Shown piece by piece: positions 2,406-64,000 of a stretch of DNA of 64,000 nt (the stretch's first letter is position 1; every line of letters starts with the position of its first letter). This stretch comes from Mobula hypostoma (Eukaryota). The notes beneath the pieces were generated by a model. The model did not search any database and was not told the DNA's origin. It saw only the letters and a list, made by a program, of their open reading frames with translations. The stretch lies in NCBI RefSeq assembly GCF_963921235.1, contig NC_086115.1, forward strand, positions 34,038,001 through 34,102,000, written 5' to 3'. The position numbers and the translations under genes are program-made.

Positions 2406-3961
2406 ATTAGATTATTAAATGATTTCCTAGTATAATAATATGGACTCTTGACCTCACAATCTACTTTATATGTCTTTGCACTTTATTGTTTGCCTGCACT
2501 GAACTTTTCCTAATAGAAACTTTATTTCTAGCAGTGAACATCAGCAGTAGCCTGTCTTGGTCTCACCACCTGCGCAAATAAAGACAGACAAGCAATTGAA
2601 TCCATTCAGTTCCTCACAGTTGAGTACAGTGATCATTAGGAAGTGACCTTGCAAGGTAGCCTCACCTGCTGGGTGTCCTGGACGCCTTCTCATCCTCGTC
2701 TTTCTCCTCAATGCAATTTTTAATAACTGAGCTCTCCCTTGGGAAGACCAATATCCAAGTTTCTATGCTGTCCTAAGTTGTTACTGTGCCTGAATGGGTA
2801 CTGGAAAGCCTCGTTGGCAAATCTGTGAGCTGAAAACATGGACAATAATGTGTGAAGAAACCCCTGAGGAAGACGATCCTTTGAGGCCTAAAGTGAGCAC
2901 TTCTGGCCCCCCGTGTTACCTAGCAGTCCCGATCTTCTGAAATGATCAAAGCATGTCCAGCTTAATGGCACGGGAATTTGTCCAATTGGAGATTTAGGCA
3001 TCAGACAACGAACTTTCGTACATTAAAAATAATATATAGCATTTTCCACAGGATCTCCCAATTGAGACAATTCTTTAGCTAAACTGGGGATTTTCTTCAG
3101 CTACTTCTTTTATGATATCTGAAAGTTTAGAAGTGCAACACAATATTAGCGCACAGGTTTTGTCCCATGGTATCATTCAACAGTTTACTGGTTGTTGCTC
3201 CCAGCTCTCTCAGAAATACTTGGTCTATCACTCATTATATTCCTTCCTGGGCTCGCTCTCCAAATGAGCATCAGATCATTGATCACACGCCCATTGGAAT
3301 CCAGAATTTCCCCTTGCATTTTCCATTTTCTTTCTTTCTGATTCCCCATTAGTCTTCCTTCAAACTCATTCTCTTCCAGCCCTGCAGCAAATTTCCATTG
3401 CAAAGCCTTCACAAGCTTATTTTCCTCTTTCATTCATTCCTTTCTCCTCAGTCAGCCTAGTCCTGATTTCGGAGATGCCTTATAGAAAAGATTCCATTTT
3501 GACTTCAAAGGTGAGCTCAATGTTGGAGACTCTCTGTTCCTGAATTTTCAAATGTTTTTTCCTCGACTCTCTGTGCCTCCTGCTTCTAAATGAATGCCTA
3601 CGATGTCTCTAAGTCACAGTCTCCACTGAGCAGAGCTAGTGAAAGCACGGACACAGGGAGGAGATAGTTACAGAGAGAGAGCAACAGTGGAGTAACAGAG
3701 GGTTAAAGTCTGAACTCTCCTGGATTGCGTGAGGCAGTGTTTGAGGAAGATATCAAATAATTTTGTGATCTTTGGTTCTTCAAAGTCTGTTGGAATATTA
3801 TTCTAAAATCCCTTCTTCACTCTCAATAGTGTGCAGGATTAATATGTAAAGGGATTAAAATGAGTGGTGCTTGAATTAACATGACCTGTTTTTAGACATA
3901 ATTGATTATCGTGACCAATTCAATTCTCAAGGAAAAAACAGGTTTGCCAGTATTAGCTTCC

Positions 3962-3974
3962 AGTTTCATTTTCC
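3962..3974 (+). promoter_or_regulatory. ISRE of IFIT gene A
   Basis: AGTTTCATTTTCC matches the ISRE consensus AGTTTCNNTTTCY exactly and lies ~50 bp upstream of the TATA box of an IFIT gene. Confidence 0.85.
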
Positions 3975-4023
3975 ATTCCACTCTTGGTTTGCAAATTTTA
4001 CAACTCAGCCCAACCCTACAGAT

Positions 4024-4030
4024 TATAAAA
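4024..4030 (+). promoter_or_regulatory. TATA box of IFIT gene A
   Basis: TATAAAA 86 bp upstream of the exon-1 ATG; the spacing in gene C is similar (83 bp). Confidence 0.75.
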
Positions 4031-4109
4031 GATACCAGAAATCCTCCCGTTGAACAGTCACGTAGCTTTACCAGTCCTCTGAAGTACGGCCAGAATCCCA
4101 AACAGCACC

Positions 4110-4114
4110 ATGAG
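4110..4114 (+). CDS. IFIT: IFIT gene A, coding exon 1 (ATGAG)
   Basis: cagcaccATGAG|gtgagt gives a good Kozak context and a consensus donor. The phase-2 join to 7331 reads M-S-D-T-L-K. A 5-nt first coding exon is the standard IFIT gene architecture. Confidence 0.85.
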
Positions 4115-5862
4115 GTGAGTGAGCCCATTTGTTTCCACAATGTTATTAGAAGTCAGGGCATTCTAAAAAATGTCGGAAGTGTTAGCATGGATGACCTGAT
4201 CAGTCAAACTTAATGTAATCTGTTTCTGGATCTGCAGACATCTGAGAAAGGAGTTTGTGATCACTTAGGGTAAGGGGATCTGAATCCTGGTTTGTGATCT
4301 GGGAAATTTACTTGATCCTGGGGATACATACTACTGGGAAATAGTGGGGGAGGCCAAGTATAAGAGATCACCCACTTTTTTCATCCCAGGAAATCATGAT
4401 TTGAGGTAAGGTTTGTAGTCCAGGTCTCCAAAATGGAAAGAATTCATGAGGAGAGAGAGCCCAAGAGGCAAATAAGTGAACATATCCTCCATTTCAAGGA
4501 ATCTGCATTGGGGGAAAGGCTTTTCATCATCGACAACATTCAGTAGTAGTGGATTATATATTGAAGTTTATGGATATCACTAAATGATGCAGTGAGCAAA
4601 GCAGATAGGGATTAAAATGTACCAAGGATTATGATGGTTAATGCAGGTGAAGCAACTGCAGAATCTGGAGTTCAGGGTGGAAGAATGTGGACAAGTTCGG
4701 AATCTGTAGAGGAGCAGTGAAACAGAAGGAAATCATTAAACCCAGTGACTGATAATCAAAGTGAACAGCGGGAAGTGAGTCTTTAATTACAAGGAGAGCT
4801 GGAAATCAAAACTGGATCTTTGCACATCTTTGGTTAAATTATCTTTGGAGTTAGTTCTGATCACCATATCTCAGCAATGATATGTGCCAGAAGGCACAGT
4901 GACAGATCGTATAGAATATGGGATTGGCAACATTAAAATATGTTGTCAGGTTTTCCAACTGGACTGATACCTGCTTGAGTGCAAGACACTTGGGAAAACC
5001 TTACCAAATTTAAATAACTTGATGAGATTGACATGGGAAGTACATTACAACGGACATAATCTGAACTTTAGGGCTCAAGCAGTCGAAGATGATGTCAATT
5101 CACAGAATTGCATGGAGGGGTGTGGGGATACTTGTTCCATTGTTCCATTGCTTTCAACATTTGTGGCTTCAGGCTTTGACATGAATGATCAGTTTCTCCG
5201 ACATTCATGATCATCTTTATCAGCATTGGATTGGATCAGCTGTCAGCGCTACGATCCCCAGAGTTACCAGATTCACCTTCGTTGTCTCGATCTCCAACAA
5301 CTGAATATGTCTTACTGATCCACTCATGCTCTTTCCCAGTTTATAATCTGGTGCACACACATCGGCTTCAGATCCCCTTTGTGATGTTCCACTTATCACC
5401 TACTAGTCCTGGTCTCACCGCTTCCTCTGACTTCTACATACAGTTTACCTTCTCTCTACTCTTCAGATCTTATAATGAGTCTCGACCCTCATCACTGACC
5501 ATTCCTTCACCTCCACAGCGTTCGACCTGTGGAGTTTCTTCAGCATATCTTTTTTATCGCTCCAGATTCAATCATCTGCAGTCTCTTGCACCTCTATCAT
5601 CTTTACCCTATTTTTCACAACTCTCTGCACTGAGGAGGAATTATCCTAGATCTCTCAGTCTTGTCCTACAGCTAGTTATTGCATTGGGCTCTCCTGAGAG
5701 ACAGAAGTCTTTTCACGGACTTGTTTATGACAGCACCAAGCGTAAGATACTGTTGTTTTCATTTTACACTTATCACTTTACAATTTTTTGTCCAATTTGC
5801 TGTGTTGTCAGCATTGCAGAAACAGTTTAAAGTCTTAGTTCAGTTCATTTCACAAGTGCATC

Positions 5863-6393: not shown

Positions 6394-7330
6394 GATATTC
6401 TCAGGTGAAATGAAAAAGTTACTTGCAGCAACATCACATAAAAGCATTCACAAGAGAAACATAAATCTAAATTACACACAATTCTTACAAGACAGAAGAT
6501 AATTATAACAAAAATAAACTAAACCCATTTTAGTGCAAAGCATTCAGAGTGTTAAACAAGAGAGATTAAAATTATGCTGATTGGTTCAAGAACTGAATGG
6601 TTGAAGGGAATTAGCTGTTCTTGAATGTGATGGTACAGGATTCCAGGCTTCTGTATCTTCTGTCTGATGGTAGATGTGAGAATATGGCATGTCCCAGATG
6701 ATGGATGTTGCCTTCTTGATTTAAACTGGATATCCATGGTATTTTCATAGCATCCGCAGTAGCTTTAGGCTCTTCCTTGAGACTTCTGTCAACAGATTTT
6801 TCATGAACGTTTTTGTCTGATGATGGGTTTCATCATCACTGGCTAATTAGCCTTGCTACTAATTGCTTTTTAATTTGCCAGCCATGTATTCAGACAGAGA
6901 ACCACCTGACCGACATGGTGCCACAAAGTTGCTTTTTTCTTTCCTTTTCCCGGCTACTGAGTTAATAATCTGCTGGACTGGCCCAACCCTTACATGACAA
7001 ATTAGAATGTAAATATATCCTGCTCTCTTGCTTAATTTAAAACACATTCATTTAGCATAGTCAGAACACAGTGGTTATTTTAATCTGGCTGTCTCGGCTT
7101 ATTGGTTGGTATTTCCAGTACCAAGACTGTTTTCCACTGGGTTAATCACCATCTGGTAGATACTGGTCTGATCAGGCAGGGATTGAACTGTTCTGCACCC
7201 ACCTCTCCCTGCCTGTGCTCCAGCTCAGGAATTCAGAATTTGCTAATATTGTCAGTCCAAGCATTTAGCAGTTAGGATGGAGAATTGATTTCACATCAAT
7301 AATCTTTGATTACTTTGTGCTTTCATGCAG

Positions 7331-8780
7331 CGACACTCTGAAGGAATCCCTGTTTGAGAAACTCTGCCAACTTCAGTGTCACTTCACGTGGATTCCACAG
7401 AAGGACAACACTGACTTCAGTGATATGAAGCTTAGATTACAAGATTCTATAAAACTTGGTGTCAAATATCAAGCCACATCCTACAACCACCTTGCTTTTG
7501 TAAACTGTCAGCAAGGCAACTATGAAGAAGCCATTCAAAATTTAAAGGAAGCGGAAAAGATTTGGAGAGAGAACCACAACAATGAATTTGAAAGAAGAAG
7601 CATCATCACCTATGGAAACTTTGCCTGGGTGCATTACCACATGGGACAGCTGACCGAGGCCCAGTCCTACCTCGACAAGCTGGAGATAATCTGTGAACCG
7701 CTCAGTGATGGCCCTCGCTATACAGCAATGACCCCTGAGGTGTACGGGGAGAAGGGATGGTCATTGTTGAGTTCTGCTGCTACTTATTATGTGGAGGCAA
7801 AAGAATGTTTTGAGAAGGCTCTGGAGAAAGATTGCAACAATGTGGAGTGGACTGTGGGCTATGCGACAGCTTTGCTTCGTCTGGAAAATATTTCTGGTGT
7901 TCCAGAAAATCTGGAGCGAAGTCAGCCAGTGAGGTATCTGCGACGGGTGCTGGAGCTTGATCCAGATGACACAGTGGCCATGGTTAATTTGGCCCTAAAG
8001 TTGCAAGAGTTCAATGAAGCAGAGAAGGCAAATGAATTAGTTGAAGAAGCATTGAGGAAGACCCCAGATCTGCCATATGTGCTTCGCTATGCAGCAAAGT
8101 TTTACAGAATAGGAGGAGATGTCGATATCGCAATAGGCCTGTTGAAGAGAGCTTTAGAATTTACTCCATGCTCGTCCTTCTTACACCACCAAATCGGTAT
8201 CTGTTACAGGGGAAAGCTATTCACTCTGAAAAAGAAAGCAGGCAGCAACTATCCTGACAGAGCTACATTTCAACTGAAAGCTGAGTTTATCAGTAAGAGC
8301 AAATATCACTTTGAAAAGGCATTTGAACTCAAACCATTGTTTATTTTTGCAAAACTGGATTTTGCAGGAATCTGCTTAGAAAATGGAGAAGTAGCCCGAG
8401 CAGAGGAGATCTACAACAGTCTGCTGAGCTTGGAGGATCTTGCTCTGGATCATAAGCAGGCACTAGCTTTACAAGTTGGATTATTTGAACTGCACCACAA
8501 AAGATCTAAATCAAATGCCATCATCTATTTTCTGGATGGACTTAAGATCCATCATGGAAGTAAACAATGGAAGCTCTGTGACAGCAACTTGAGAAAGATC
8601 TTAAGAAAACAAATTCAGAGGAATCCAAGAAACAGCAAAGCCTTTGGAATTCTTGGGATGGTGCACCAGCTGGCTGGGGAGAAGGATGAGGCTGTTAAAT
8701 GCTTTGAAAAGGCCTTGGAATTTGATCCTGGCAATGAAGAATATCTCAATTCTCTTTCTGACTTACGCCTTTCAACTTAG
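7331..8780 (+). CDS. IFIT: IFIT gene A, exon 2: interferon-induced protein with tetratricopeptide repeats, IFIT1/IFIT5-like (484 aa spliced)
   Basis: Acceptor tttcatgcag|C. IFIT signature motifs CHFTW, YGNFAWVHYHM, EKGWSLL, PYVLRYAAKFYR, SSFLHHQIGICY and C-terminal DPGNEEYL..L..LRLS. Uninterrupted ORF. Confidence 0.96.
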
Positions 8781-13466: not shown

Positions 13467-15185
13467 TAAGACCATAAGACATAGGAGTAAAGTTAGGTCT
13501 GCCATACCCTAATTGCCTCTGGTTCATTACATAACACACTATCCAGTATAGCTGATCCCCTGGTAGGCTCAACAACAAACTGCTCCAAAAAGCAATCTCA
13601 TGGACATTCAACAAATTCACTCTCCTGAGCTCCATTACAAACCTGATTTTTCCAATCTACCTGCATGTTAAAGTCTCCCATGACTTTCGTACATTGCCCC
13701 TTTGTCATGCCTTTTTTATTTCCCACTCTATCGTCTATTCCACATCCCAGCTAACTGTTTAGAAGCCCGTATACAACTGCCATCAGGGTCCTCTGACACT
13801 TGCAGTTTCTTAACTCAACCCACAACATATCAACATCTTCTGATCCTATGTCAAATCTTTCTAATGATTTGATGCCATTCTTTACCAGCAGAGCCGTGCC
13901 ACCCCGTCTGCCTACCTTCCTATCCCTCCGATACAATGTGTAATTTTGGACGTTCAGCTCCCAACTACAACCATCCTTCAGCCACAATTCAGTGATGGGC
14001 ACAACATCATACCCAACAATCTGTAAAAGTGAAACAAGATCATCCACCTTACTTCTTATACCCCATGTATTAACATATAACACTTTGAATATTGTATTTG
14101 CTACCCCTTTTTGATTCTGTATCCTTAATGCACTGATACTCACCCTACTGCCTGCAATTATGTCCTATCATCTGCCTCCCCTTCCTGACAGTCTGACTGC
14201 ATGCTATCTTTGCTTTTTTCTTACTATCCACTCTATCCTGAGTCCCTTTATTCCTGTTCCTATCTCCTGCCAAATTAGTTTAAACTCACCCCAACAGCTC
14301 GAACAAACTTGCCCACAAGAATATTGGCCACCCTCAGGTTCAGGTGCAACCCATCCCTTTTGGATAGGTCATATCTGCTCCAAAAGAGGACCCAATGATC
14401 CAAGAACCTGAAGCCATGCCCTCTAAGCCAGCTTCTCAGCCATGCATTTATCTGCCATATCATCCTGTTTCTACCCTCACTGGTGCATGGCACAGGCAGC
14501 AGTCCAGAAATTACTACACTGGAGTTCCTGCTTCTCAACTTCCTGCCTAGCTCTCTAAATTCTCTTTTCAGGACCTCCTTGTTTTTCCTTCCTATGTCAT
14601 TGGTACCAACATGTACCAAAGCATTTGGCTGCTCTCCCTTCCCTTCCAAAATGCTGTGGATGCAAAGTGAGATGTCCCTGACCCTGGCACAAGGGAGGCA
14701 ACATACCATCCGGGTGTCCCATTCACATCCATGGAATCTCCTGTCTGTTCCTATGGCTATTGAGTCCCCTATCACTACAGCTCCCCTATTCTCCCTCTTT
14801 CCCTTTGGCCCCACCAACCCACGCTCAGTGTCAGTAGACTGGTCTCTGTGGCATTCCCCTGGGAGGTCATCCCCCACTTTAGTATCTAAAAAGGTATACT
14901 TATTATAAAGGGGAATGGCCACAGGGGTGCTCTGTGCTATCTACCTATTCACCTTCCCATTCCTTCTCATGACAGTCCTCCAGCTACCTGCCTCCTGCTA
15001 CTCAGGGATAACTACTCCCTGTAATTCTGATTGATGATCTCCTCACTCTCCCATACAAGCCGATGTCATCCAGCTGCTGTTTCATACCCCTAACACGGTC
15101 TTCACGGAGCTGCAGTTGGATGCAGTTCCCAGGGCTCCAACTCCCAGCATGAATAACACACTACAGCCATTTAAACTACACTAAG
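13467..15185 (-). mobile_element. CR1 LINE, internally deleted (ORF1 SGNH-esterase + start of ORF2 endonuclease joined directly to the 3' tail)
   Basis: ORF 14275-14922 has the GDS, HVGTND and DGLH esterase motifs. ORF 13751-14143 has the EN motifs (TELWL, RRDR..GGT). The CR1 3' tail (taagaccataagacatagg) at ~13467-13500 abuts the EN region, so the RT is missing. Confidence 0.85.
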
Positions 15186-15206
15186 TACCCCTGACACAGC
15201 AAGGGA

Positions 15207-16010
15207 ATGTTACCATTGGCCTTGAAGCTACCAGACTTCAATGAAAAGGAGGAAGCAAATGGGTTCGTCAAAGAACCACCACAGAAGGTCACTGATCTTC
15301 CATATGTGTTTCAGTATGCAGCAAAATTTTACAGACAAAAACAAGCTGTGGAGAAAGGTATCAAGCTGTTGAAGGAAGCTTTAGAAATAACTCCAAACTT
15401 CTTTCACAATGAAATGGCCATGTGTTACAATGATAAAAGAAGAAACATGCAGAGAACTCCATTCTGCAGGAACCATCACTGTCTTTTATCTGAATTGATC
15501 ATTCAATACAAGTATCACTTTGAAAAAACATATGAAAATAGTGTAAGTTCAGCAATTAAATCACAGCTGGACTTTGCAAACTTCTGTGAAGTAATTGGAG
15601 ACTCCTCCAAAGCAGACGAGATCTATACCAACTTGGTGAAGTTAAAGTATACTTGTCCAGAAAGTATGCAGAAAATATATTTATATGCTGGGTCGTTTGA
15701 ACTGCACCACAAAAAGTCTGAATCCGATGCTATTAATCTACTGCTGAAAGGCCTGAAGATTGATTATGATTCAAATGAACGCAAAATGTGTCAGAAGGAA
15801 TTGGAAAATTGGGCAGATGGGAAACTTTGCAGGTATCAACATGATGGTAAGGCCCTTGGTGTTAAAGCATTAGTGTATCAGCTGGATGGGAACAAGTCTA
15901 AAGCTATTGAATACTTTCAGAAAGCCTTGATGATTGATCCTTGCAATGAGGAATATTTGAGTGCACTTTGTGAATTATGCCTTTCCATCAAGAGTCAAAA
16001 TGATGATTGA
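15207..16010 (+). pseudogene. IFIT: IFIT copy B: 5'-truncated gene, C-terminal half still an open 267-aa ORF
   Basis: Aligns to genes A and C from the internal Met of AMVxLALKL to the C-terminus (DLPYVFQYAAKFYR, KYHFEK, QLDFA, DPCNEEYLSALCEL). The N-terminal ~220 codons are absent, with CR1 in their place. Confidence 0.85.
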
Positions 16011-18264: not shown

Positions 18265-20349
18265 GTCCTCATAATGACCAAGCCTGTTAGAAATATAAGC
18301 GAAGGAAAAGGTCTTGATTCATGTGCTCTTTGAGACTTTGAAGTATTCAGATGTAAGTGATGAAGGGAATGTTTTTTTTTCCAAGGAGGAGTGAAACCTT
18401 TTCGGTTGACAAAGCAAAGTAAAAAAAAAATTGGTAACAAGGAGACCAGTTCAGTAGAAACATAAAATCCTCCCTCTACCTCTCCCATTAAGAAATAATT
18501 AATTTTAGAATTGTATCTGACCTATATGCATAGATTATAAAAGAAGCGTGGGCTTTCGTGATTACATACTGTAAGTGTGAACGATGAGTATTCTCTGCCC
18601 TCAGACCGGAATCACAATTGGTGCCAAGGACATCGAAGAGTCTCCAGGCCAGTCATCACAAATTGGAGGTCGGTAACGGGCAGAACGACATGAGGTTGAT
18701 ACTGTATTGATAATTCTGTACTGTTTTAAACTTGCTGTTTTGTTAATTCTTTGTATCACTCAGTGAAACAAACATGTGACTTGCTCTTTTATCAATTATT
18801 TTGCACTTAGACTAGGTGTTTTATAATTCTTTATGTTTCATTTTTCTGATCACTTAGTATACTCGAATAGAATACTTTGCAAGAACTTTTGAGTGTTCTT
18901 TCTTCTGCACTGATCCAAACCATCAAAACCTGCTTATCATTCCCTTGCACACCCATACTGATCACCACTTGGACACTGCCTGCCTTGATTAACGTTTAAC
19001 TACGGGCCATTGTGAAATCATTCTGCACGCAAATATGACAGGAAAAATCAAAGTTCGAAAGTTTAAAGGTAGGATTTATTATCAGAGTGCATACATATCA
19101 TCATATACCACTCTGAGACTCTTTCTCCTGTTGACGTGCTCAGCAAATCTACAGAATAGTAACTATAAAAAAGGATCAAAGAAAGAGCGAGAGCATCGAA
19201 GACAACAAAAAGTGTAAATGCAAAGATAAATAACGAAGGCAAGAAATAACAAGATAAAGAGTCCTTAAAATGAGATCATTGTTTGTGGGAACATCTCGAT
19301 ATATGAGTTTAGTTATCCTCTTTTTTTCAAGAGCCTGACGGTTGAGGGATAGTAACTGTTCTTGAACCTGCTGGTGCGAGTCCTGAGGCTCCTGCACCTT
19401 TTACCCGATGGCCGCAGCAAGAAAAGAGCATGGCCTGTGCAGTGAGATTCTTTGATGACGAATGCTGTTTTTTTATGACAGTGTTTCATGTAGACATGCT
19501 CTGTGGTGCTGAATCACCACAGACACAATATCTCTTTTATCAGAACTATTGGACAGAGTCACAATAGTTGTTAATGAGCAATGAGTAATATTCGGATTTA
19601 TGATGAGTGTTTCCTGGCACTTGATTATAACTCCAGGTGAGCGAGTGATTTTGAAAGGACCAGTTCAGACCTGTAGGTACACTGCAGTGTGGGCGCAGTA
19701 GCAAGGTGTTCACCATGTTAAGGTAAGGGCTATTGATCCAGCATGCAGATAAACATAAACAAACACAATTAGAGAAATTAGGGACTTGCAAGAAGTCAAG
19801 TGAAACTATCAGCAGGAAAGGAAATCACCCATCCATTTGAATCTCACCTGTACTTTTCTTGAGACCCACCCATCCAGTTCAGTCAGTGACATAGTGAAGT
19901 GGTGTAGTTTGGCAGGATAATCAGAGGCAAGTGGTTTGTGAATGGAAGACATTGTACATTGGCCTATAATCGCATCGCAATGTGCCAGTTTGGTACAATA
20001 ATTGGAGAAAAGTTTGATTCCTTTCCTACTTTTGCCTCTCCATTCTGTCTACCCGGTGAGTTACTGATATCAGTTTTTGGCATTAATACATAAGAACCTG
20101 AAGATCTCACTAAAGAATGGTGTAATCCTATTTTGTGGAGTAGACCAGACGTATCTTCCAGTGCAGTTCAGGAGAAACATCTTTAACTCTGTTCCATTCA
20201 CATACAGTAAAGAGCAGGTCCTGGGGAGTGATGTAGAACAGAGAGCGTGAGGGGCAGGTAGATGGGAGAGGGGGAGGGGGCGCAGTGTGAAGAAGGCAAA
20301 TGACACTCATGTCATGCCTTCAGTGATCAGAACAATGAGCACAGATTCT

Positions 20350-23699: not shown

Positions 23700-25036
23700 T
23701 GGGTTCATTGTCCATTCAGAAATCTGATGCAGGTGGGGAAGAAGCTGTTCCTAAAATGTTGAATGTGTGTCCTCAGGCCCCTGTACCTCTTCGTTGATAA
23801 TAGGGTAATCAGGGCCCTTAACAATGGATGCCCCCTTTTTAAGGCATCGCCTTTTCTAAACGTCCTTAACGTTGGGGAGGCTTGTGCCCATGATTGGGGC
23901 TGTCTGAGCTTACAACTTTCTGCAGCTTTTCCGAATGTGACGCAGTGGCCCCTCCATACCTGACAGTGATACAACCAGTTCAAATGCTTTCCACTGTACA
24001 CCTCTAGAAGCTGGGGACATAGCAAATCTCCTCAAACTGCAAATGAGATATAGCCACCTCTGTGCCTTCTTTGTAATTGTATCAGTACGTTGGGCCCAGG
24101 ATAGACCTTCAGAGATGTTGACACCCAGGAACTTGCAACTGCTCACCCTCCCTATGATTGATTCCTCAATGAGGACTGATGTGTGTTCCCTCAAATTCCC
24201 TGTCCTGAAATCCACAACCAATTCTTTGGTGTTACTGGCATTGAGTGCATGGTTGTTGTTGTAGCACCACTCAACCAGCTGATCTATCTCACTCCTGTAT
24301 GCCTACTTGCCACCATCAAAACTCTGTCAACAATAGTTGTGTCATGGGCAAATTTATAGATGCCATTTGAGCTCTGCCTAGCTACATATTTGTGGGTGTA
24401 GGAAGAGTAGAGCAGTAGGCTAAACATGCATCTTTGAGATGCACCAGTGTCAGCGAGGTGGAGATGTTCTGTCTGCTCTGCACTGACTGTGGTCTCCCAA
24501 GAAGGAAGTCGAGGATCCAGTTGCAAAGGGAGGTATAGCGACCAAGGTTTTGTAGCTTGTTGATTAGTACTCAATTTATGATGGCGTTGAATGCTGAGCT
24601 GTAATCAATAAACAGCAGCCTGAAGTACATATTGCTATTGTCAAGGTGCCCCAAGGCCAAGTAGAGAGCCAGTGAGATTGCATCTGCTGTAGACTTATTG
24701 TTGCAAGGGGAAAATTGCAGTGGATCCAGGTCCTTCCTTAGGACGGAGCTGGTTATGGCCATGACCAACCTCTCAAAGCACTTCATCACAATAGACAGTG
24801 CAAATGGGCAAAAGTCAATGAAATCACTCATCCTGCTCTTCTTGGGCACTGTATGATTGTCACACTTTTGAAGCAGATAGGAACTTCTGACTGCAATAAT
24901 GAGAGTGTGAAAAAGTCGATGAGCACTCTTGCCATTTGGTTGGCACAGATTTTCAGTACTCTACCAGGTACACCATCATGCCTGATGCCTTGTGAGGTTT
25001 TACCCTCATAAGAAATGTCCTGATGTCGGCCTCCAT
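23700..25036 (-). mobile_element. Rex1/Babar-like LINE, 3' part (interrupted by CR1)
   Basis: [25 protein letters not shown] and KFLGVNI motifs. The frame continues at 28366. Confidence 0.85.
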
Positions 25037-28000
25037 AGAAACATAGAAACATAGAAAATAGGTGCAAGAGTAAGCCATTTGGCCCTTTGAGCCTGCACCG
25101 CCATTCAGTATGATCATGGCTGATCATCCAACTCAGAACCCTGTACCAGCCTTCCCTCCATACCCCCTGATCCCTTTAGCTACAAGGGCCATATCTAACA
25201 CCCTCTTAAATGTAGCCAATGAACTGGCCTCAACTGTTTCCTGTGGCAGAGAATTCCACAGACTCACCATTCTCTGTGTGAAGAAGATTTTCCTAATCTC
25301 GGTCCTAAAAGGCTTCCCCTTTATCCTCAAACTGTGACCCCTCATTATGGACTTCCCCAACATCGGGAACAATCTTCCTGCATCTAGCCTGTCCAATCCC
25401 TTTAGGATTTTATACGTTTCAATCAGATCCCCCCTCAATCTTCTAAATTCCAACGAGTATAAGCCTAGTTCATCCAGTCTTTCATCATATGAAAGTCCTG
25501 CCATCCCAGGAATCAATCTAGTGAACCTTCTTTGTACTCCCTCTATGGCAAGGATGTCTTTCCTCAGATTAGCTTACCAAAACCGCACACAATACTGCAG
25601 GTGTGGTCTCACCAAGGCCTTGTACAACTGCAGTAGTACCTCCCTGCTCCTGTACTCGAATCCTCTTGCTATAAATGCCAGCATACCATTCGCCTTTTTC
25701 ACCGCCTGCTGTACCTGCATGCCAACTTTCAATGACTGGTGTATAATGACACCCAGGTCTCATTGCACCTTCCCTTTTCCTAATCGGCCACCATTTATAT
25801 AATAATCTGTTCTCCTGTTTTTGCCACCAAAGTGGATAACTTCACATTTATCCACATTAAATTGCATCTGCCATGAATTTGCCAACTCACCTAACCTATC
25901 CAAGTCACCCTGCATCCTCTTAGCATCCTCCGCACAGCTAACACTGCCGCCCAGCTTCGTGTCATCCGCAAACTTGGAGATGCTGCATTTAATTCCCTCA
26001 TCCAAGTCATTAATATATATTGTAAACAACTGGGGTCCCAGCACTGAGCCTTGCGGTACCCCACTAGTCACTGCCTGCCATTCTGAAAAGGTCCCATTTA
26101 TTCCCACTCTTTGCTTCCTGTCTGCCAACCAATTTTCTATCCACATCAATACCTTACCCCCAATACCGTGTGCTTTAAGTTTGCACACTAATCTCCTGTG
26201 TGGGACCTTGTCAAAAGCCTTTTGAAAATCCAAATATATCACATCCACTGGTTCTCCCCTACTCTACTAGTTACATCCTCAAAAAATTCTATGAGATTCG
26301 TCACACATGATTTTCCTTTCTCAAATCCATGCTGACTTTGTCCGATCATTTCACCGCTTTCCAAATGCGCTGTTATCACATCTTTGATAACTGACTCTAG
26401 CAGTTTCCCCACCACCGATGTTAGGCTAACCGGTCTATTATTCCCCGGTTTCTCTCTCCCTCCTTTTTTAAAAAGTGGGGTTACATTAGCACCCTCCAAT
26501 CCTCAGGAATTAGTCCAGAATCTAAAGAGTTTTGAAAAAGTATCACCAATGCATCCACTACTTCTTGGGCTACTTCCTTAAGCACTCTGGGATGCAGACC
26601 ATCTGGCCCTGGGGATTTATCTGCCTTTAATCCCTTCAATTTACCTAACACCACTTCCCTACTAACATGTATTTCCCTTAGTTCCTCCACCTCACTGGAC
26701 CCTCTGTCCCCTACTATTTCTGGAAGATTATTTATGTCCTCCTTAGTGAAGACAGAACCAAAGTAATTATTCAATTGGTCTGCCATGTCCTTGCTCCCAA
26801 TAATCAATTCACCTGTTTCTGTCTGTAGGGGACCTACATTTGTCTTTACCAGTCTTTTCCTTTTTACATATCTATAAAAGCTTTTACAGTCAGTTTTTAT
26901 GTTCCTTGCCAGTTTTCTCTCATAATCTTTTTTCCCCTTTCTAATTAAGCCCTTTGTCCTCCTCTGCTGAACTCTGAATTTCTCACAGTCCTCAGGTGAG
27001 CCACTTTTTCTGGCTAATTTGTATGCTTCTTCTTTGGAATTGATATTATCTCTAATTTCTCTTGTCAGCCATGGGTGCACTACCTTCCTTGATTTATTCT
27101 TTTGCCAAACTGGGATGAACAATTGTTGTAGTTCATCCATGCAACCTTTAAATGCTTGCCATTGCATATCCACCGTCAACCCTTTAAGAGTCATTTGCCA
27201 GTCTATCTCAGCTAATTCACGTCTCATACCTTCAAAGTTACCCTTCTTTAAGTTCAGAACCTTTGTTTCTGAATTAACTATATCACTCTCCATCTTAATG
27301 AAGAATTCCACCATATTATGGTCACTCTTACCCAAGGGGCCTCTCACGACAAGATTGCTAATTAACCCTTCCTCATTGCTCAATACCCAGTCTAGAATAG
27401 CCTGCTCTCTAGTCGGTTCCTCGACATGTTGGTTCAAAAAACCATCCCGCATACATTCCAAGAAATCCTCTTCCTCAGCACCCTTACCAATTTGGTTCAC
27501 CCAATCTACATGTAGATTGAAGTTACCCATTATAACTGCTGTTCCTTTATTGCACACATTTCTAATTTCCTGTTTAATACCATCCCCAACCTCACTACTA
27601 CTGTTAGGTGGCCTGTACACAACTCCCACCAGCGTTTTCTGCCCCTTAGTGTTATGCAGCTCTTCCTATATCGATTCCACATCCTCCCGGCTTATGTCCT
27701 TCCTTTCTATTGTGTTAATCTCCTCTCTAACCAGCAACGCCACCCCACCTCCTTTTCTTTCATGTCTATCCCTCCTGAATATTGAATATCCCTGAATGTT
27801 GAGCTCCCATCCTTGGTCACCCTGGAGCCATGTCTCTGTGATCCCAACTATATCATATTCATTAATAACAATCTGCACTTTTAATTCATCCACCTTGTTA
27901 CGAATGCTCCTTGCATTGACACACAAAGCCTTCAGGCGCGCTTTTACGACTCTCTTAGCCCTTATACAATTATGTTGAAAAGTGGCCCTTTTTAATGCTT

Positions 28001-28360
28001 GCCCTGGATTTGTCAGCCTGCCACTTTTACTTTTCACCTTACTACTTTTTGCTTCTACCCTCATTTTACACTCCTCTGTCTCTCTGCACTGGTTCCCATC
28101 CCCCTGTTGTGGACTAAGCTCCTCTCGCCTTGGCTCTTTAATTTGATTCCCACCCCCCCAACCATTCTAGTTTAATGTCACCTCAGTAGCCCTCACTAAT
28201 CTCCCTGCCAGGATATTGGTCCCCCTAGGATTCAAGTGTAACCCGTCCTTTTTGTACAGCTCACGCCTGCACCAAAAGAGGTCCCAATGATCCAAAAACT
28301 TGAATCCCTGCCCCCTGCTCCAATCCCTCAGCCACACATTTATCCTCCACCTCATTGCAT
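25037..28360 (-). mobile_element. Young CR1 LINE (end of ORF1 + near-complete ORF2 with a few lesions)
   Basis: EN (GITETW, SDH), RT (GVPQGSVLGP, FADD) and an (ATAGAAAC)n tail. Flanked by TCCAT at 25032-25036 and 28361-28365. Confidence 0.93.
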
Positions 28361-39448: not shown

Positions 39449-39505
39449 CATGGAAAATTCTTCATGACACAAACAATTTCCAGGGAGAAAACATCCGGCT
39501 TCTTC

Positions 39506-39577
39506 AGCTTTGCTTTCTTCATCCACTTTGAGACAAATATTTTGATAGATTTTAGCTCCACCCGGACACTATATAAA
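39506..39577 (+). promoter_or_regulatory. Gene C promoter: degenerate ISRE (AGCTTTGCTTTCT, 39506-39518) and TATATAAA (39570-39577)
   Basis: Positionally homologous to the ISRE and TATA box of gene A. Confidence 0.65.
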
Positions 39578-39652
39578 CAACTAGAACAACACTTTGCAGA
39601 GTTACTCAGCTAACCAGCCATCTGAGGTGCAGCTGGAATTCTGCACAGCATC

Positions 39653-39657
39653 ATGAG
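39653..39657 (+). CDS. IFIT: IFIT gene C, coding exon 1 (ATGAG)
   Basis: cagcatcATGAG|gtgagt. The phase-2 join to 42002 reads M-S-N-T-P-G-D-V-L-K. The intron start is homologous to that of gene A. Confidence 0.87.
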
Positions 39658-41274
39658 GTGAGTCGTATCTTCATTTACAGAATGTTTACAAATTCTCGGA
39701 CATTTGACAGTGACATTAGCATGGATAGCTGGATCAGTCAGATTTAATATAATCTGTTTCTGGACATGAAGGGACCTAGAAAAGTTGCCGGTGTTCATTC
39801 AGCATAAGGATTGTGGATCTGATCTCAGGTTTGTGATGTGGGGACTTTAGCTTGATCCTGGGATCAGAGACCACTGGAGTGGGATGAGCCCACAGAATGT
39901 GAGCACTCAGTTTGATATCCCATGGTCTGATAATAATTTGAAATAAGGCCTGTGGTGCTAAGACATTGAAGGATAGGGAGCTGATTGGGAGTGTGGAAAG
40001 CGAACATTACACGAAGGAGCGTATCCTCCGAATTGATGACATGATTTTTAAGTTCCGCAGTGGGGAACTGACTTTTCCCAGTAGTTTGCATTCAGTGAAC
40101 TGCAGGAGCAGTGAGTGAGATACTAAAGTTTACAGCTGTCACTGAGAGGTCTAGTGAATTGAGCAGATGGGGATTAAAAGCTGCAATGGATCATTGGCAA
40201 AAAGGTGAGTAGGAAAAAGTGAGCAAACCGGAATGTGCTGTGAAAAATATGGATACTGGTGAAAGAGCAGAGAAATACAGGGAAATTATGACACTCAGCA
40301 GACAAATAACTGACGTGACAAATAGAAACATAGCCTTAATTTCAAGGGATGTTGGAATCTACGTATACTTGTTGTGCTACTTCTGTATAAATCTCTCAAT
40401 AATTTACAATGGCTGAGTTTTAGAGTTTATTCTGGGCACAATATTTCAAACATCAGACTCTGAGCTTGAAGATTCCTTAAAATGAGGCTGGTCCTGAAAG
40501 CACTAATTGTGAAGACAGGTTATGTAGAAAGGCTGATATTTACCTAGATGTTGGAGATTACAGTAAAAGATTTGATAAGGTCCACTGAGAAAACTCTCTG
40601 CCTGACCTGCTGAGCTCCTCTAGCACTTTGTGTGTGCTACTCTGCAGAATACCATGTGTCATGAAAGCGCGTTCTTTATCTGAACACTTCTGTCAAAACA
40701 ACTTGCACTCACGGGACAGCAATTTAGTTGTTGGAGGTGATACGCACAGAATGCTGGGGGACCTCCGCAGATGAAGAGATGAAACAGTAGATGTTTTGGG
40801 CCAAAACCCTTCATCCCGGGTTCGGATCTGAGGACACATTTTGGTATGGAATGTTGTTGTTTGCTTGAATTATTTCACAACTTGTGTTTTTTTTATTCTC
40901 TTGCACATCGGGTGTTCATCTTTTATTGTTTCCATTCAGTGTTCAAAGTTCCAAGTGAATTTTATTGTCAAAGTACATATATGTCACCATATTCAATCCT
41001 GAGATTCATTTTTGTGAGCATACTCAATAAATCTATAGGATAACAGTTATTACATAATTAATGAAAGATCACTCAACTAGGCTGTTCAACCAGAATGCAG
41101 AAAACAAACTTTGCAAATATAAAAAAAAGAAATAATAAAAATAAATAAGTAATTAATATGGAGAACATAAAATGAAGAGCCTTTGAAACTGGGTCTAATG
41201 GCTGTGGGTACATTTCAATAATGGGCCAAGTGAAGTTGAGTGAAGTTTTCCCCATTGGATCAAGAGTCTGATGT

Positions 41275-41475: not shown

Positions 41476-42001
41476 AATTCTTTAAAAGTAGGATGTGGTT
41501 CAGCTCTGCCATATACTACATCTATGTAGATTTGAGCACATTGGAGCTTATGGGGTGTATTGAGTACTTAGTTAATAAACCAGAGGAACATGCTACTCTA
41601 AACTGTCATAACTTCCAGCCCCTAGTGGCTTTCAGGACAGGATGGAGGAACTGCATCCATGGTGCGGCAAATTCATCTCCTTTGGGAGAAACCAAGTGCA
41701 ACATCAGTGTAGTGAAACAACAGATCAGCTGCCTAGGCTGTTCAGGAGACACATTTCTATCTTCATCACATGAATCAATTCTTCATATAGGGTTATTGAT
41801 CTGAAACATTGATAGATTCTCCTTCCTCAGATGCAGACTGACAGGCTGAGCATTTCCAGGCTTTCAATGTCATAATTTTAAAAAAAACTTTAAAAGGCAG
41901 CTTTCATACAGTTAGTAAATCAGCTCTTTATGGGATTACAGGGCAGATCTGTATCAAGTGATCTGAGATGGAATTCATGATTATGTTTTTCTCTCTTGCA
42001 G

Positions 42002-43436
42002 CAACACACCGGGAGATGTATTGAAAGAGAAGCTCGATCAACTGCAGTGTCACTTCACATGGAGACCACAGAAGGAAACTATTGACTTGGAAGATCTGAT
42101 GCACAGATTGCAAGATTCTATCGATATGAATATGAAGTATAAAGATCAGGCCTACAACCAATTTGCTTTTTTAAATTGTTTGCAGGGCAAATGTGTGGAA
42201 GCAATTCAAAATTTAAAGGAAGCTGAAAAAATTCTGAGGGAGAACCACAAAGATGAATTTGAAAGAAGAAGCATCATCATCTATGGAAACTTTGCCTGGG
42301 TACATTACCACATGGGACAGCTGACCGAGTCCCAGTCCTACCTCGAAAAGCTGGAGATGATCTGTAAACCGCTCAGTGACGGCCCTCGCTATACAGCAAA
42401 GATCCCTGAGGTGTACGGGGAGAAGGGATGGTCATTGTTGAATTCTGCTTCTGAATTCTATGAGGAGGCAAAGGAATGCTTTGCAAAGGCTCTGGAGCAA
42501 GACCCTGACAACACCGAGTGGATAATGGGATATGCGACTGCACTGTCTCGTCTGGAATCAATGTCTGGAACCCCAGAGAGTCGTGATCAGAGTCAGTCAG
42601 TGAAGTATTTCCGACGAGTACTGGAGCTTGATCCAGATGATGCTGTGGCCATGGTGCTGTTGGCTCTAAAACTGCTGAGGTTACAACAAAATGAGGAAGC
42701 ACGTAAATTCGTTGAACAAGCATTGCAGAAGACCCCAGATCTTCCATATGTGCTTCGCTATGCTGCAAAATATTATAGACAAGTAGGATCTGTGGAGAAA
42801 GCAATCGAGCTGTTGAAAAAAGCATTAGAGTTAACTCCACACTCTGGTTTCTTATACCACCAACTTGGATTGTGCTACAGAAAGAAGCTGAAATACACTC
42901 GTAGCAGATACGCTCGCAATCCTGAATTTCAGCAGAGAGCTGAGTTGATCAATCTATGCAAGTATCACTTTGAAAAGGCTTTTGAGCACCGTCCAAGGTC
43001 ATTTATTAGAGCACAACTGGACTTTGCAGACATCTGCATAACAAGTGGGGAGTATTACAGAGCAGAGGAGATCTACAGTAGATTGAAGGAGTTAGTGGAC
43101 ATTCGACCAGAAAACATGCAGAGCATATGTCTGGAAGCTGGGTTATTTGAACTAAACCAGAAGAATTCTGAAACAAATGCTGTTCGCCTCTTCCTGAAAG
43201 GAGTGAAAATTGAATATAACTCAATAGAACGGGAAAAATGTCGCATGAATTTGGAGGAGTGGACAGATAGAAAACTTAGTGTAAATGCACAAGACAGCGA
43301 GGCTCTTGGTGTCAGAGCATTTCTGTATCAGCTGGATGGGAACCAGGGTAGAGCAGCTGAGTACTTTGAGATGGCCTTGGAGTTTGATCCTGACAATGAG
43401 GAATATGTGAGTGCTCTTTCTCGGTTACGTATCTGA
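42002..43436 (+). CDS. IFIT: IFIT gene C, exon 2: IFIT1/IFIT5-like TPR protein (479 aa spliced)
   Basis: Acceptor ttttctctcttgcag|C. Motifs CHFTW, YGNFAWVHYHM, PYVLRYAAKYYR, GFLYHQLGLCY and DPDNEEY. Uninterrupted ORF. Confidence 0.96.
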
Positions 43437-52064: not shown

Positions 52065-52868
52065 TTTTCATATATTTCCACACTTACTGATACACTTACT
52101 TATATATAATCATTGCTAACCTGTTTGATTTATCTGCATTTATATTACTGTATTGAGTAGTTACTAATCAATATCATTAGTTAGTAGCAATACCGGACTC
52201 CAAAGTGTTTTCCATCTCTGCTGTTTTTTTGGGTTTTTTTTGCTATAACTGTATTTGGTGCTCAGTGTTGGTATTGTGCATTCATAGGCACATCAGTAAA
52301 GACAGATCAGGATGCTTGTGTCAAAAGTAAAGCAGACTTATTATTTCAGGCCAATAAGCTTTCATTGCAAGAAATTATCTCCCATTTAAACAGATTACAG
52401 CCCAGTCACTTGTTTCAACAACACCAGACAGATAAACATATCCAGTACTTTCTGTTGTTATTTAGACGTCTAGTATCTGCAACACTTTCTGTACCATTTT
52501 GGATGCTTAGCAGTACCAAGGCTGGTGAGAGTAAGACGTCAGAGAATGTCAGTGTCACCACAGACAAAAATAGGCCTTTGGCCCATCATTGAGTTGCTGC
52601 CACGTGATTGACTGATCGGATATTTGCATTAACGAGCAGGTGTACAGGTGTACATAATAAAGTGTACAACTTGATGTATATGTAATAATGCAAATATGAA
52701 ATAAAAGTAACTCCCATTTGGGGTCGCTAGATGGACAACTTGAAATTTATTCATGTGTTGTTTAAAGTTAGGAGGACACAATAACTCTCGGCTTTGTTAC
52801 AAGTAATGATGTGAAGAAAAATGATCATGTATGAAGTGATGAATTTCATGAATTTTCTTCACTAACAG

Positions 52869-53290
52869 CAACACACAAAGAGATTTGTTGAAAGAGAAGC
52901 TCGATCAGCTTCAATGTCACTTCACGTGGGACCCTCAGAAGGGAAACGTTGACTTGGAAGATATGACATACAGACTGTGAGATGCTATAAAAATCTGGGT
53001 GTGAAATATCAAACCATGTTTCACAATCAACTCGCTTTCATAAATGTCTGCAGGGAAACAATAAAGAAGCCATTCAGAACTTAATTGAAACCCTTGTCAC
53101 CCTGCATTTCGCCAGAAAGCAAAGTTGTTTAATCAATACAAGCATCATTTTGGAAAGGCATTTGAGCACCGTCCAATATCAGCTATTAAACCACAACTGG
53201 ATTCTGCAGTTGTAAGTGAAAGAAATGGAGAGTATTCCAAAGTGAAGGAGATCTACAGTAATCTTTTGAAATTAGATGATATTCATCCAA
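52869..53290 (+). pseudogene. IFIT: IFIT copy D pseudogene (stop, frameshifts, ~690-nt internal deletion, 3' truncation)
   Basis: Acceptor ctaacag|C, then NTQRDLLKEKLDQLQCHFTWDPQKGNVDLEDMTYRL* with an in-frame TGA at 52978. It jumps from AIQNL to QYKHHFGKAFEHRP..QLDSA and ends at DIHP. Confidence 0.92.
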
Positions 53291-54319: not shown

Positions 54320-55370
54320 GGTACCATATCCGATGTGGACGTTGGTAACAATGGTTTTCCATATAGATCTATCCCTCATTTTTCGGATGACTTCCATTAC
54401 CTCGATGTGTAGCCACCTAGCTAGGCTTTTGATGTACATAGGCCGAGGTCTTCCTCTCGATCTTTCCAGAAAGTAAGTTTTTCTTGTTGATCTTTCCGCA
54501 TGATGTGTCCTAGGAATCTGAGTTGTCTTTCTCTTATTGTTGGTATGAGTAATCGAACTGCTTGGGCTCTTCTGAGAACTTCTTCATTTGATGTGTGTGT
54601 GGTCCATGATATTTTTAACATTCTCCTGTAGAACCATAATTCAGTTGCTTCTAGTCTCTTTTCCATTGCTGGGGAAATGGTCCAGCTTTCACTTCCTTAA
54701 GATGGGATAAAATAAACATAGCACTGCAGTATTCTGTTTTGAGAGTACATGCTCATCTTTCTGTCTGTTAATATGGTCTTTATTTTTTGGAAAGCTTCTT
54801 TCACCATTGCTATTCTGTATTTGATATCTGTGTCGCACCTGCCATCACTTATTATTAGGCTGCCAAGATATCCGAATGTGTTGACTTGTTTGATGTTTGT
54901 ATTTCTGATCTTGATCACACATTGTGGGATGTTTGTCTTTCTGGAGATGACCATGCTTTCTGTCTTCTTGGTGTTGATTGAGAGGCCTCTGCGATTACTT
55001 TCTGCTGCCACTACAGTGAGTAGTTCTTGAAGTTTTGTTTCTGAGACAACTATTAGTATGATGTCATCAGCATATCTGATGTTATTTATATTATGGCCTC
55101 CAATTGTGAATCCTTTGATGCTTTTGATACTTCTCAAGATATTTTCACTATTCAGGTGGAATATGTCTGTCGAAAAGACAACCTTGCCTGACTCCTCTCA
55201 TGATATTCACATACCCACTCACTTCTCCTTCTATTCTGATGGATGCTGTCTGGTCCCAGCATAAGTTTCTTAAGAAAGGTATATCTTTCCCATCTATGTC
55301 AAGATCTTGAAGCATTTTCAGAAGAACTTGGTGTCTGACAGTGTCAAAAGCTTTTGTATAGTCGATGAAA
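54320..55370 (-). mobile_element. RTE-clade LINE 3' fragment
   Basis: NNIRYADD, GLSINTKKT, FGYLGS and EATELWFYRRMLKISWT are typical of RTE RT. Confidence 0.88.
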
Positions 55371-60100: not shown

Positions 60101-60212
60101 TATAAAGGGTTGTCAAGTCGAACATCAGATGCAGCAACGTAAACGCAGCAGAAGAAGAAACGCACAAACTGAGAAAGACACAAATTGCTTTCCATCCAAC
60201 TAACATCATGAG
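60101..60212 (+). other. Candidate TATA box + exon 1 of a fifth IFIT copy (E); ATGAG at 60208-60212
   Basis: TATAAAG at 60101 and aacatcATGAG|gtaaag, followed by sequence paralogous to the gene C intron. Exon 2 is not in the window. Confidence 0.55.
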
Positions 60213-61172: not shown

Positions 61173-61399
61173 AACAACAGGCAGAGTTGATCTTAGAGTA
61201 GGTTTAAAGGTCGGCACATCATGATGGGCTGAAGGGCTGTAAGGTGCTGTGAAGATCTATGTTCTATGCTGGTCTGTGTTCTTTCAGAAATGTACAGCAG
61301 GATCAGGGGATGTTGCTCATGTAATTGCACTGTGAACTGGTCTGATAACTCGTAACTTGCCAGACTTCAGTGGACTTCACAAAACAGCTTTATCTTACT

Positions 61400-63933: not shown

Positions 63934-63934
63934 T

Positions 63935-64000
63935 TTCAAAGTTGCTGGTGAACGCAGCAGGCCAGGCAGCATCTCTAGGAAGAGGTACAATCGACGTTTC
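63935..64000 (-). mobile_element. Penelope tail inserted in CR1, cut by the window edge
   Basis: Reverse complement of 51952-52015, beginning GAAACGTCGA (the 3' half of the hammerhead). Confidence 0.8.

What the first reader, a model, noticed from the sequence alone, without database searches (positions are those of the whole stretch)
7584..7778. Likely gene-conversion tract between IFIT A and C, with mostly replacement differences
Counted by hand: 7584-7778 versus 42255-42449 (65 codons) differ at only 10 of 195 nt, of which 2 are synonymous and 8 non-synonymous. The C-terminal halves, in contrast, are very divergent and contain indels. Near-absence of silent changes is not expected from protein constraint alone and points to ectopic conversion of the TPR2-3 region, making the genes mosaics. 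Gene conversion is established for mammalian IFIT1/IFIT1B; recurrence here would be convergent.
Basis: partly seen in the sequence, partly recalled or inferred. Interest (0 to 1): 0.7.

Follow-up and report, generated by a model that had tools for sequence, protein, structure and literature searches.

The report
Gene-conversion patch in ray IFIT genes
Two old, otherwise very different antiviral IFIT genes of the devil ray Mobula hypostoma share a nearly identical stretch of about 200-250 bases because that stretch was copied between gene copies, as is known for mammalian IFIT1/IFIT1B, and the same stretch is also homogenised in sawfish and skate.

Summary
It is far beyond chance. Synonymous divergence (dS) is 0.051 in the tract against about 0.88 in the rest of the gene, and no permutation of 500 reached the observed signal.

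The window is the Mobula hypostoma IFIT cluster. A is an "IFIT5-like" gene and C an "IFIT1-like" gene.

With sawfish, skate and shark DNA, the flanks give ((MhA,PpA),((MhC,PpC),skates)), but the tract groups A with C. Informative sites in the tract are 5 species-wise to 1 orthologous, against 13 to 130 outside.

The same patch is the low-dS segment between subfamilies in Pristis and in skate. Lineage-specific residues are also shared across subfamilies in stingrays. This is therefore a recurrent, family-wide conversion hot spot on the most conserved protein segment, not necessarily a direct A-C exchange.

A diverged skate paralogue shows normal silent divergence in the tract, and no RNA structure is detected, so nucleotide constraint alone fails. 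One residue is unexplained: Mobula-Pristis orthologues still show 2-3 times less silent change here.

The 8:2 ratio equals the neutral expectation. It is a new member of a known kind, of moderate interest.

The parts
7584..7778 (+). Core homogenised tract in IFIT A. It covers codons 87-151 of the protein and encodes TPR2-3.
   Evidence: 10 of 195 nt differ from C. dS is 0.051 against 0.88 in the rest. The third-position scan gives 7583-7781, with 0 of 500 permutations reaching it. Five species-wise informative sites fall here: 7649, 7705, 7733, 7739, 7767.
42255..42449 (+). Matching tract in IFIT C, 34,671 bp downstream on the same strand.
   Evidence: The alignment with 7584-7778 is ungapped.
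7527..7583 (+). 5' shoulder of the tract in A. The counterpart in C is 42198-42254. Divergence is intermediate: 8 of 57 nt differ.
   Evidence: The all-sites maximum-likelihood segment is 7527-7778 (18 of 252 against 0.326 outside). This may be an older or longer conversion tract.
7329..8780 (+). IFIT A exon 2, the whole coding sequence apart from the first codon or two. It is annotated as 'IFIT5-like' (P0001/P0121) and belongs to the A-type subfamily.
   Evidence: 100% match to P0001 residues 2-484. Matches human IFIT5 and IFIT1 structures at E=1e-102 and 5e-99.
42000..43436 (+). IFIT C exon 2. It is annotated as 'IFIT1-like' (P0147, XP_062928165.1) and belongs to the C-type subfamily.
   Evidence: The ORF is intact. 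The nearest paralogues are 85-87% identical.
15189..16010 (+). IFIT B, a C-terminal-half fragment. It lacks the tract region.
   Evidence: tblastn matches only residues 205-469 of C.
52867..53289 (+). IFIT D, an internally deleted remnant. It also lacks the tract.
   Evidence: tblastn matches A residues 5-64 and 313-375 only.

Best explanation
The patch is a product of non-allelic (interlocus) gene conversion within the tandem IFIT cluster.

Genes A (A-type) and C (C-type) belong to subfamilies that split before skates and rays diverged. Their flanks are saturated with silent differences.

The stretch of about 200-250 bp that encodes TPR2-3 has been overwritten from another family member since the Mobula and Pristis lineages separated. 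In this stretch A and C therefore share a much younger ancestor.

The same stretch is repeatedly homogenised in other batoid lineages and across all three subfamilies. It is the most conserved protein segment of elasmobranch IFITs.

The likely reason for the location is inferred, not shown: this segment keeps enough nucleotide identity for homologous repair, while the flanks have escaped.

Since the last homogenisation, A and C have gained about 3 and 7 private changes at a neutral ratio of replacement to silent.

**Shown:** the dS dip, the two-sided boundaries, the tree incongruence and the recurrence in other lineages.

**Inferred:** the repair mechanism, the donor and direction, and the reason for the hot spot.
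For: - **Silent divergence.** Tract dS is 0.051 against 0.88 in the rest. Same-amino-acid codons differ at 2 of 54 against 74 of 224 (p=2e-6), and no permutation of 500 reached the signal.
- **Flank tree.** The flanks give ((MhA,PpA)100,((MhC,PpC)82,skates)100). They reject A+C by 149 lnL units (AU 6e-6).
- **Tract tree.** The tract gives (MhA,MhC) with 89% support and rejects the flank topology (AU 0.0175).
- **Quartet sites.** In the tract, 5 sites group by species and 1 by orthology. Outside it the counts are 13 and 130 (Fisher 8e-5).
- **Shared derived states.** A and C share four states absent from all Pristis, skate and shark copies. Three are silent (7649, 7733, 7739) and one is T>S (7705).
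- **Distance order.** In the tract d(A,C)=0.051 is smaller than d(C,skate)=0.23-0.30. In the flanks C is closer to the skate genes than to A.
- **Recurrence.** Pristis A2/C differ at 2 of 56 same-amino-acid codons against 71 of 257 (p=2e-5). Skate L003/L004 differ at 4 of 57 against 70 of 281 (p=0.002). Independent scans pick overlapping segments each time.
- **Protein level.** The motif reads PLSDGP in all 69 Myliobatiformes proteins of the three subfamilies. It reads PLTDGP in all 19 Pristis, skate and Narcine proteins. MGHL occurs only in Hemitrygon, in 4 of 6 A-type and 5 of 13 C-type proteins.
- **Against constraint.** The diverged skate paralogue shows 17-19 of 41-46 same-amino-acid codons changed in the tract, the same as its flanks.
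Against: - Mobula-Pristis orthologues also have fewer silent changes in the tract. Pooled, 8 of 109 same-amino-acid codons differ against 117 of 590 (p=0.001). The MhC-PpC scan was reached by only 2 of 200 permutations. Conversion cannot produce this.
- If the A-C expectation is scaled by that factor, the count of 2 of 54 is only mildly surprising (p=0.03).
- The tract is short. The AU test against a second orthology tree gives only p=0.085.
- One site (7709) still groups C with Pristis C.
- No DNA of the other Mobula paralogues could be obtained, so the donor, the direction and the timing are unknown.
- The GC3 rise in the tract (0.59 against 0.41) is also seen in the paralogue that does not exchange. 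It is therefore weak evidence for biased conversion.
Confidence: 0.85

Rival explanations
1. Nucleotide-level constraint alone explains the pattern. Under this view an RNA or DNA element embedded in the exon keeps silent sites fixed, and no sequence has passed between paralogues.
For: Silent divergence in the tract is below the flanks in nearly every pair, orthologues included. The ratio is about 0.3-0.45 for Mobula-Pristis and 0.4-0.6 against shark. The MhC-PpC scan finds 7542-7829, reached by 2 of 200 permutations. The Pristis C tract has hardly changed since the common ancestor.
Against: - Constraint cannot change tree topology or erase the old A/C split. Only 1 orthology site remains where 4-8 would be expected. 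There are 5 species-wise sites where about 0.8 would be expected.
- d(A,C) is smaller than d(C,skate) in the tract.
- The diverged skate paralogue shows no reduction.
- RNA folding z-scores are +1.0 and +0.2, and there is no Rfam match.
Confidence: 0.05
2. Conversion and a weak silent-site constraint (or a biased repair process) act together on the same patch. This rival accepts the conversion explanation and adds a second layer to it.
For: A 2-3-fold deficit of silent changes remains between orthologues, and conversion cannot create it. GC3 is raised in the tract in all copies. Three of the four derived changes shared by A and C run from A/T to G/C.
Against: The numbers are small (3 of 54 and 5 of 55). 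The MhA-PpA2 scan is not significant (113 of 200 permutations). Another valley of similar depth lies at alignment codons 290-340, where the protein is not conserved. No RNA structure is detected. By my own estimate, GC-biased conversion strong enough to give GC3 of about 0.7 would lower the rate by only about 15%.
Confidence: 0.3
3. Strong protein constraint together with shared codon preference makes the codons identical by chance.
For: The peptide is nearly invariant across all elasmobranch IFITs.
Against: The test restricted to codons that encode the same amino acid still gives 2 of 54 against 74 of 224. Shark and the diverged skate copy keep the peptide but have changed 20-44% of those codons.
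Confidence: 0.02
4. An assembly artefact or an unequal crossover produced a chimeric gene.
For: Tandem paralogues are prone to both.
Against: The two copies still differ at 10 sites. The patch has two boundaries inside one exon, whereas a single crossover gives one boundary. The same pattern appears in independent assemblies of Pristis and Leucoraja and in skate transcripts.
Confidence: 0.02

Closest known systems
Recurrent gene conversion between mammalian IFIT1 and IFIT1B (Daugherty et al. 2016, eLife, PMC4887208)
   Same: It involves the same gene family and tandem paralogues in one cluster. Part of the gene is repeatedly homogenised in several lineages while the C-terminal part diverges. 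Gene trees are scrambled as a result, and the converted region includes the TPR2-3 codons.
   Different: In mammals the whole 5' portion is homogenised (about nt 1-948, at 97-98% identity), with a recurrent breakpoint two-thirds of the way along at the 'pivot'. Here the first 230 nt of exon 2 are as diverged as the 3' end (dS about 1.0). The tract is an internal patch of about 200-250 bp that ends at codon 151-152. The exchange also crosses at least three subfamilies rather than linking one pair.
Short-tract non-allelic gene conversion in tandem gene families (general knowledge; reviewed in PMC4467073 for human duplications)
   Same: The tract is a few hundred bases long, the paralogues lie on the same chromosome in the same orientation, and the result is a mosaic gene.
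   Different: Those cases mostly involve young duplicates that are more than 90% identical. Here the flanks are only about 70% identical, so the tract survives only where protein constraint has preserved identity.

Membership tests
Interlocus gene-conversion tract (concerted evolution) | A local drop in silent divergence between paralogues relative to the flanks, beyond chance | tested here: met
   dS is 0.051 against 0.88. None of 500 permutations reached the signal. Fisher 2e-6 on same-amino-acid codons.
Interlocus gene-conversion tract (concerted evolution) | A patch bounded on both sides, with two breakpoints | tested here: met
   Differences are dense before about 7527-7583 and again from 7779.
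Interlocus gene-conversion tract (concerted evolution) | Tract and flanks give different trees: paralogues group by species in the tract and by orthology in the flanks | tested here: met
   Quartet sites are 5:1 in the tract against 13:130 outside (p=8e-5). AU p=0.0175 on the tract and 6e-6 on the flanks.
Interlocus gene-conversion tract (concerted evolution) | Not explained by nucleotide constraint, meaning silent sites in the tract are free to change in copies that do not exchange | tested here: met
   In the diverged skate paralogue 17-19 of 41-46 same-amino-acid codons have changed, equal to its flanks. Caveat: Mobula-Pristis orthologues keep a 2-3-fold deficit.
Interlocus gene-conversion tract (concerted evolution) | Donor and direction identified | not testable with these tools
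   DNA of the other Mobula paralogues could not be retrieved. There is only a weak protein hint that A was the recipient: it ends in LLSSA, while its nearest A-type relatives end in LLT[SF]G.
Interlocus gene-conversion tract (concerted evolution) | A GC-biased footprint | tested here: inconclusive
   GC3 is 0.59 against 0.41, but it is also raised in the paralogue that does not exchange.
IFIT protein family | A TPR protein of about 480 residues homologous over its full length to IFIT1/IFIT5 | tested here: met
   Human IFIT5 matches at E=1e-102 over residues 1-483 and IFIT1 at 5e-99. Source names read IFIT5-like and IFIT1-like.
IFIT protein family | Interferon inducibility and binding of the 5' end of RNA | not tested
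   No expression or biochemical data were available here.
Mammalian-type IFIT1/IFIT1B conversion | The 5' two-thirds is homogenised, with the breakpoint at the subdomain pivot | tested here: not met
   The 5' 230 nt have dS of about 1.0. The tract ends at codon 151-152, whereas the mammalian tract runs to about nt 948.
Mammalian-type IFIT1/IFIT1B conversion | Recurrence in independent lineages | tested here: met
   Seen in Mobula, Pristis and skate by DNA, and in Hemitrygon by protein.

The most novel reading that the evidence does not exclude
The patch is more than a conversion hot spot and also carries a function at the nucleotide level, or is kept uniform by selection. Under this reading all hetero-interacting IFIT paralogues keep the same RNA-end-binding TPR2-3 module while the rest of the protein diversifies. 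This would explain why silent sites are 2-3 times less diverged even between Mobula and Pristis orthologues, which conversion cannot achieve.
Probability: 0.2. Interest if true: 0.6.

Novelty: new member of a known kind. Interest (0 to 1): 0.4.

Why it matters
IFIT gene trees in cartilaginous fishes will be misleading if this patch is included. Orthology calls and tests for positive selection need it masked, as was necessary for mammalian IFIT1/IFIT1B.

The result also shows that partial homogenisation of IFIT paralogues arose independently in vertebrates separated by more than 400 million years. It always includes the TPR2-3 module. That points to a shared functional or mechanistic reason for keeping this module uniform.

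The natural mosaics could guide domain-swap experiments on RNA specificity. These include A and C, each of which carries several departures from the otherwise fixed peptide.

Tried and rejected
- **Mobula DNA.** Look-ups for other M. hypostoma and M. birostris paralogues returned no DNA because the sample files were too large. Donor, direction and dating against the Mobula split are therefore open.
- **Metagenome scan.** The one scan found only an unrelated vertebrate IFIT at 39% identity (L002).
- **Short Logan/ENA cluster members.** P0136-P0138 are unrelated 36-53-residue peptides.
- **RNA-structure hypothesis.** Folding energies are no better than shuffled sequence (z +1.03 and +0.17), and there is no Rfam match.
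- **A second tract at 8022-8069.** All 10 same-amino-acid codons are identical there, but 374 of 500 permutations reached this, so it is not significant.
- **GC-biased conversion as an independent proof.** Weakened, because the paralogue that does not exchange also has raised GC3 in the tract.
- **Positive selection on the 8 replacements.** The ratio equals the neutral expectation. Only omega of 0.2 or lower is rejected (p=0.02).
- **The antisense ORF 42373-42840.** It has no counterpart in A and was treated as chance.

Full report
**What the window is.** The 487-codon ORF at 7317-8780 (A) matches a Mobula hypostoma protein at 100% on a 66.69 Mb chromosome. All close relatives are annotated as IFIT5-like or IFIT1-like proteins of rays, sawfish, skates and sharks.

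The ORF at 42021-43436 (C) is annotated as IFIT1-like XP_062928165.1. A matches human IFIT5 and IFIT1 structures over its full length, at E=1e-102 and 5e-99.

The window also holds a C-terminal-half IFIT fragment (B, 15189-16010) and an internally deleted remnant (D, 52867-53289). Neither contains the region in question. Outside exon 2, blastn detects no A-C similarity in the flanking DNA.

**The observation.** There are 10 differences in 195 nt, 2 silent and 8 replacement. Overall A and C are 59.6% identical in protein, and the C-terminal half carries indels.

- NG86 gives tract dS 0.051 and dN 0.054. The 5' flank gives dS 1.01 and the 3' flank 0.85.
- A maximum-likelihood scan places the low-divergence segment at 7583-7781 on third positions. 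There, 4 of 67 differ against 0.40 outside, and none of 500 permutations reached this.
- On all sites the segment is 7527-7778.
- Among codons that encode the same amino acid, 2 of 54 differ inside against 74 of 224 outside (Fisher 2e-6).
- The 3' edge is abrupt at 7779. The 5' edge is graded.
- The longest perfect run is now only 38 nt.

**Protein context.** The 65-residue peptide is the most conserved part of elasmobranch IFITs. It is nearly invariant across three batoid subfamilies (A-type, C-type and a third, T-type) and is strongly conserved in sharks.

It aligns with human IFIT1 residues 89-153, which is TPR2-3. From memory of the Abbas et al. structures, this stretch ends at the Trp and Lys of the RNA 5'-end pocket. 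I did not verify that here.

All eight replacement differences are departures of A or C from the family consensus. Two to three lie on the A lineage. Five replacements and both silent changes lie on the C lineage.

The 8:2 ratio equals the neutral expectation from 154.5 replacement sites and 40.5 silent sites. Only omega of 0.2 or lower is rejected (p=0.02). This suggests relaxed constraint, or shuffled family variants, rather than demonstrated positive selection. Several of the variants recur in other paralogues.

**Bringing in other species.** DNA of other Mobula genes could not be fetched. I obtained the following instead:
- A carcharhiniform shark IFIT (L001).
- Skate transcripts (L003 and L005).
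- Leucoraja genomic copies (L004; L010).
- Four Pristis pectinata genes: A-type P0017 and P0016, C-type P0024 and T-type P0037 (L006-L009).

Non-coding DNA around C aligns with the Pristis C-type locus at 70-80% identity. This supports orthology and gives a neutral yardstick.

**Segment trees.** The flanks give ((MhA,PpA)100,((MhC,PpC)82,skates)100). So the A/C split predates the skate-ray split. A grouping of A with C is rejected by 149 lnL units (AU 6e-6).

The tract gives (MhA,MhC) with 89% support and disfavours the flank tree by 11.2 lnL units. AU is 0.0175, or 0.085 for a second orthology tree.

Quartet-informative sites for MhA, PpA2, MhC and PpC:

| Region | Orthologous | Species-wise |
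|---|---|---|
| Outside the tract | 130 | 13 |
| Inside the tract | 1 | 5 |

Fisher gives 8e-5.

A and C share four derived states that are absent from every Pristis, skate and shark copy. Three of them are silent.

In the tract, d(A,C)=0.051 is smaller than d(C,skate)=0.23-0.30. In the flanks C is nearer to the skate genes than to A.

**Recurrence.** The same patch is the lowest-divergence segment in other pairs:

| Pair | Same-amino-acid codons differing in tract | In the rest | p |
|---|---|---|---|
| Pristis A2/C | 2 of 56 | 71 of 257 | 2e-5 |
| Pristis A1/C | 4 of 58 | 71 of 253 (0.28) | 3e-4 |
| Skate L003/L004 | 4 of 57 | 70 of 281 | 0.002 |

For Pristis A2/T, the third-position scan picks an overlapping segment, reached by none of 200 permutations. 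The segment boundaries vary between pairs but always cover about 7581-7760.

At the protein level, one motif reads PLSDGP in all 69 Myliobatiformes proteins of the three subfamilies. It reads PLTDGP in all 19 Pristis, skate and Narcine proteins. The variant MGHL occurs only in Hemitrygon akajei, in both A-type (4 of 6) and C-type (5 of 13) genes.

So the patch is exchanged family-wide. The A-C identity need not come from a direct A-C event. A's nearest A-type relatives end the tract with LLT[SF]G, while A has the C-type-like LLSSA. This hints that A was a recipient, though tree support is weak.

**The constraint rival.** RNA folding of either copy is no better than shuffled sequence, and Rfam finds nothing.

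A diverged skate paralogue at another locus keeps the peptide fairly well. It has nevertheless changed 39-44% of same-amino-acid codons in the tract, the same as in its flanks. The tract is therefore not intrinsically frozen.

A residue remains. Mobula-Pristis orthologues show 3 of 54 and 5 of 55 changed codons in the tract. Their flanks show 56 of 300 and 61 of 290 (pooled p=0.001). The MhC-PpC scan singles out 7542-7829, reached by only 2 of 200 permutations.

Two copies from different species cannot share an ancestor younger than the species split. Conversion therefore cannot explain this 2-3-fold deficit. With that scaling, the count of 2 of 54 alone is only mildly surprising (p=0.03). The case for conversion therefore rests mainly on the topology and on the shared derived sites.

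GC3 is raised in the tract (0.59 against 0.41), but the paralogue that does not exchange shows the same rise. It is therefore weak evidence for biased conversion.

**Comparison with what is known.** Daugherty et al. 2016 showed recurrent conversion between mammalian IFIT1 and IFIT1B. It homogenises about nt 1-948, with a recurrent breakpoint two-thirds of the way along.

The ray case involves the same family and the same process, and it includes the same TPR2-3 codons. It differs in three ways. It is a short internal patch. The first 230 nt are fully diverged. The exchange spans several subfamilies.

Two full-text searches found no report on elasmobranch IFIT conversion.

**Verdict.** It is a new member of a known kind and of moderate interest. 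One unexplained residual remains: the silent-site deficit between orthologues.

Noticed in passing
window 7542-7829 compared with L007 and L008 (Pristis orthologues): Silent divergence between Mobula and Pristis orthologues is 2-3 times lower in the tract than in the rest of the gene (pooled 8 of 109 against 117 of 590, p=0.001). Gene conversion cannot explain this. It could reflect weak silent-site constraint, biased repair or sampling noise.
   Followed up: partly
window 18568-18681, 41985-43409, 54321-54485, 60620-60739: The public 585-residue gene model for C (P0147) joins C's exon 2 to an exon 23 kb upstream and to two exons 11-17 kb downstream. It skips C's own stop codon. It looks like a read-through or chimeric annotation.
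   Followed up: partly
window 59353-61506: This stretch aligns with the region upstream of the Pristis C-type gene (L007 8452-11025). It fits the 5' end of the next C-type gene (P0045), whose large exon lies just beyond the end of the window.
   Followed up: partly
window 25035-28340 (-) and 62224-63935 (+): Two LINE-type retrotransposon copies carry endonuclease and reverse-transcriptase ORFs. They are 85-87% identical to copies in the little skate locus L004, which is unusually similar for such distant species.
   Followed up: partly
window 14275-14922 (-): An ORF with a GDSL-lipase/OSK-like domain sits just upstream of the truncated IFIT B. It is probably the ORF1 esterase of a CR1-like retrotransposon.
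   Followed up: no
window 3955-4814 and 39451-40600: Both stretches lie 1.5-3.3 kb upstream of A and C. Both match the same region upstream of the Pristis A-type gene (L006 6807-7963), at 66% and 75% identity. The shared region may be a promoter or first-exon region, or a repeat.
   Followed up: no
L010 19768-21174 (Leucoraja erinacea): A diverged skate IFIT subfamily at a separate chromosomal position has much higher GC3 (0.59 overall, 0.83 in the tract). It takes no part in the homogenisation.
   Followed up: partly
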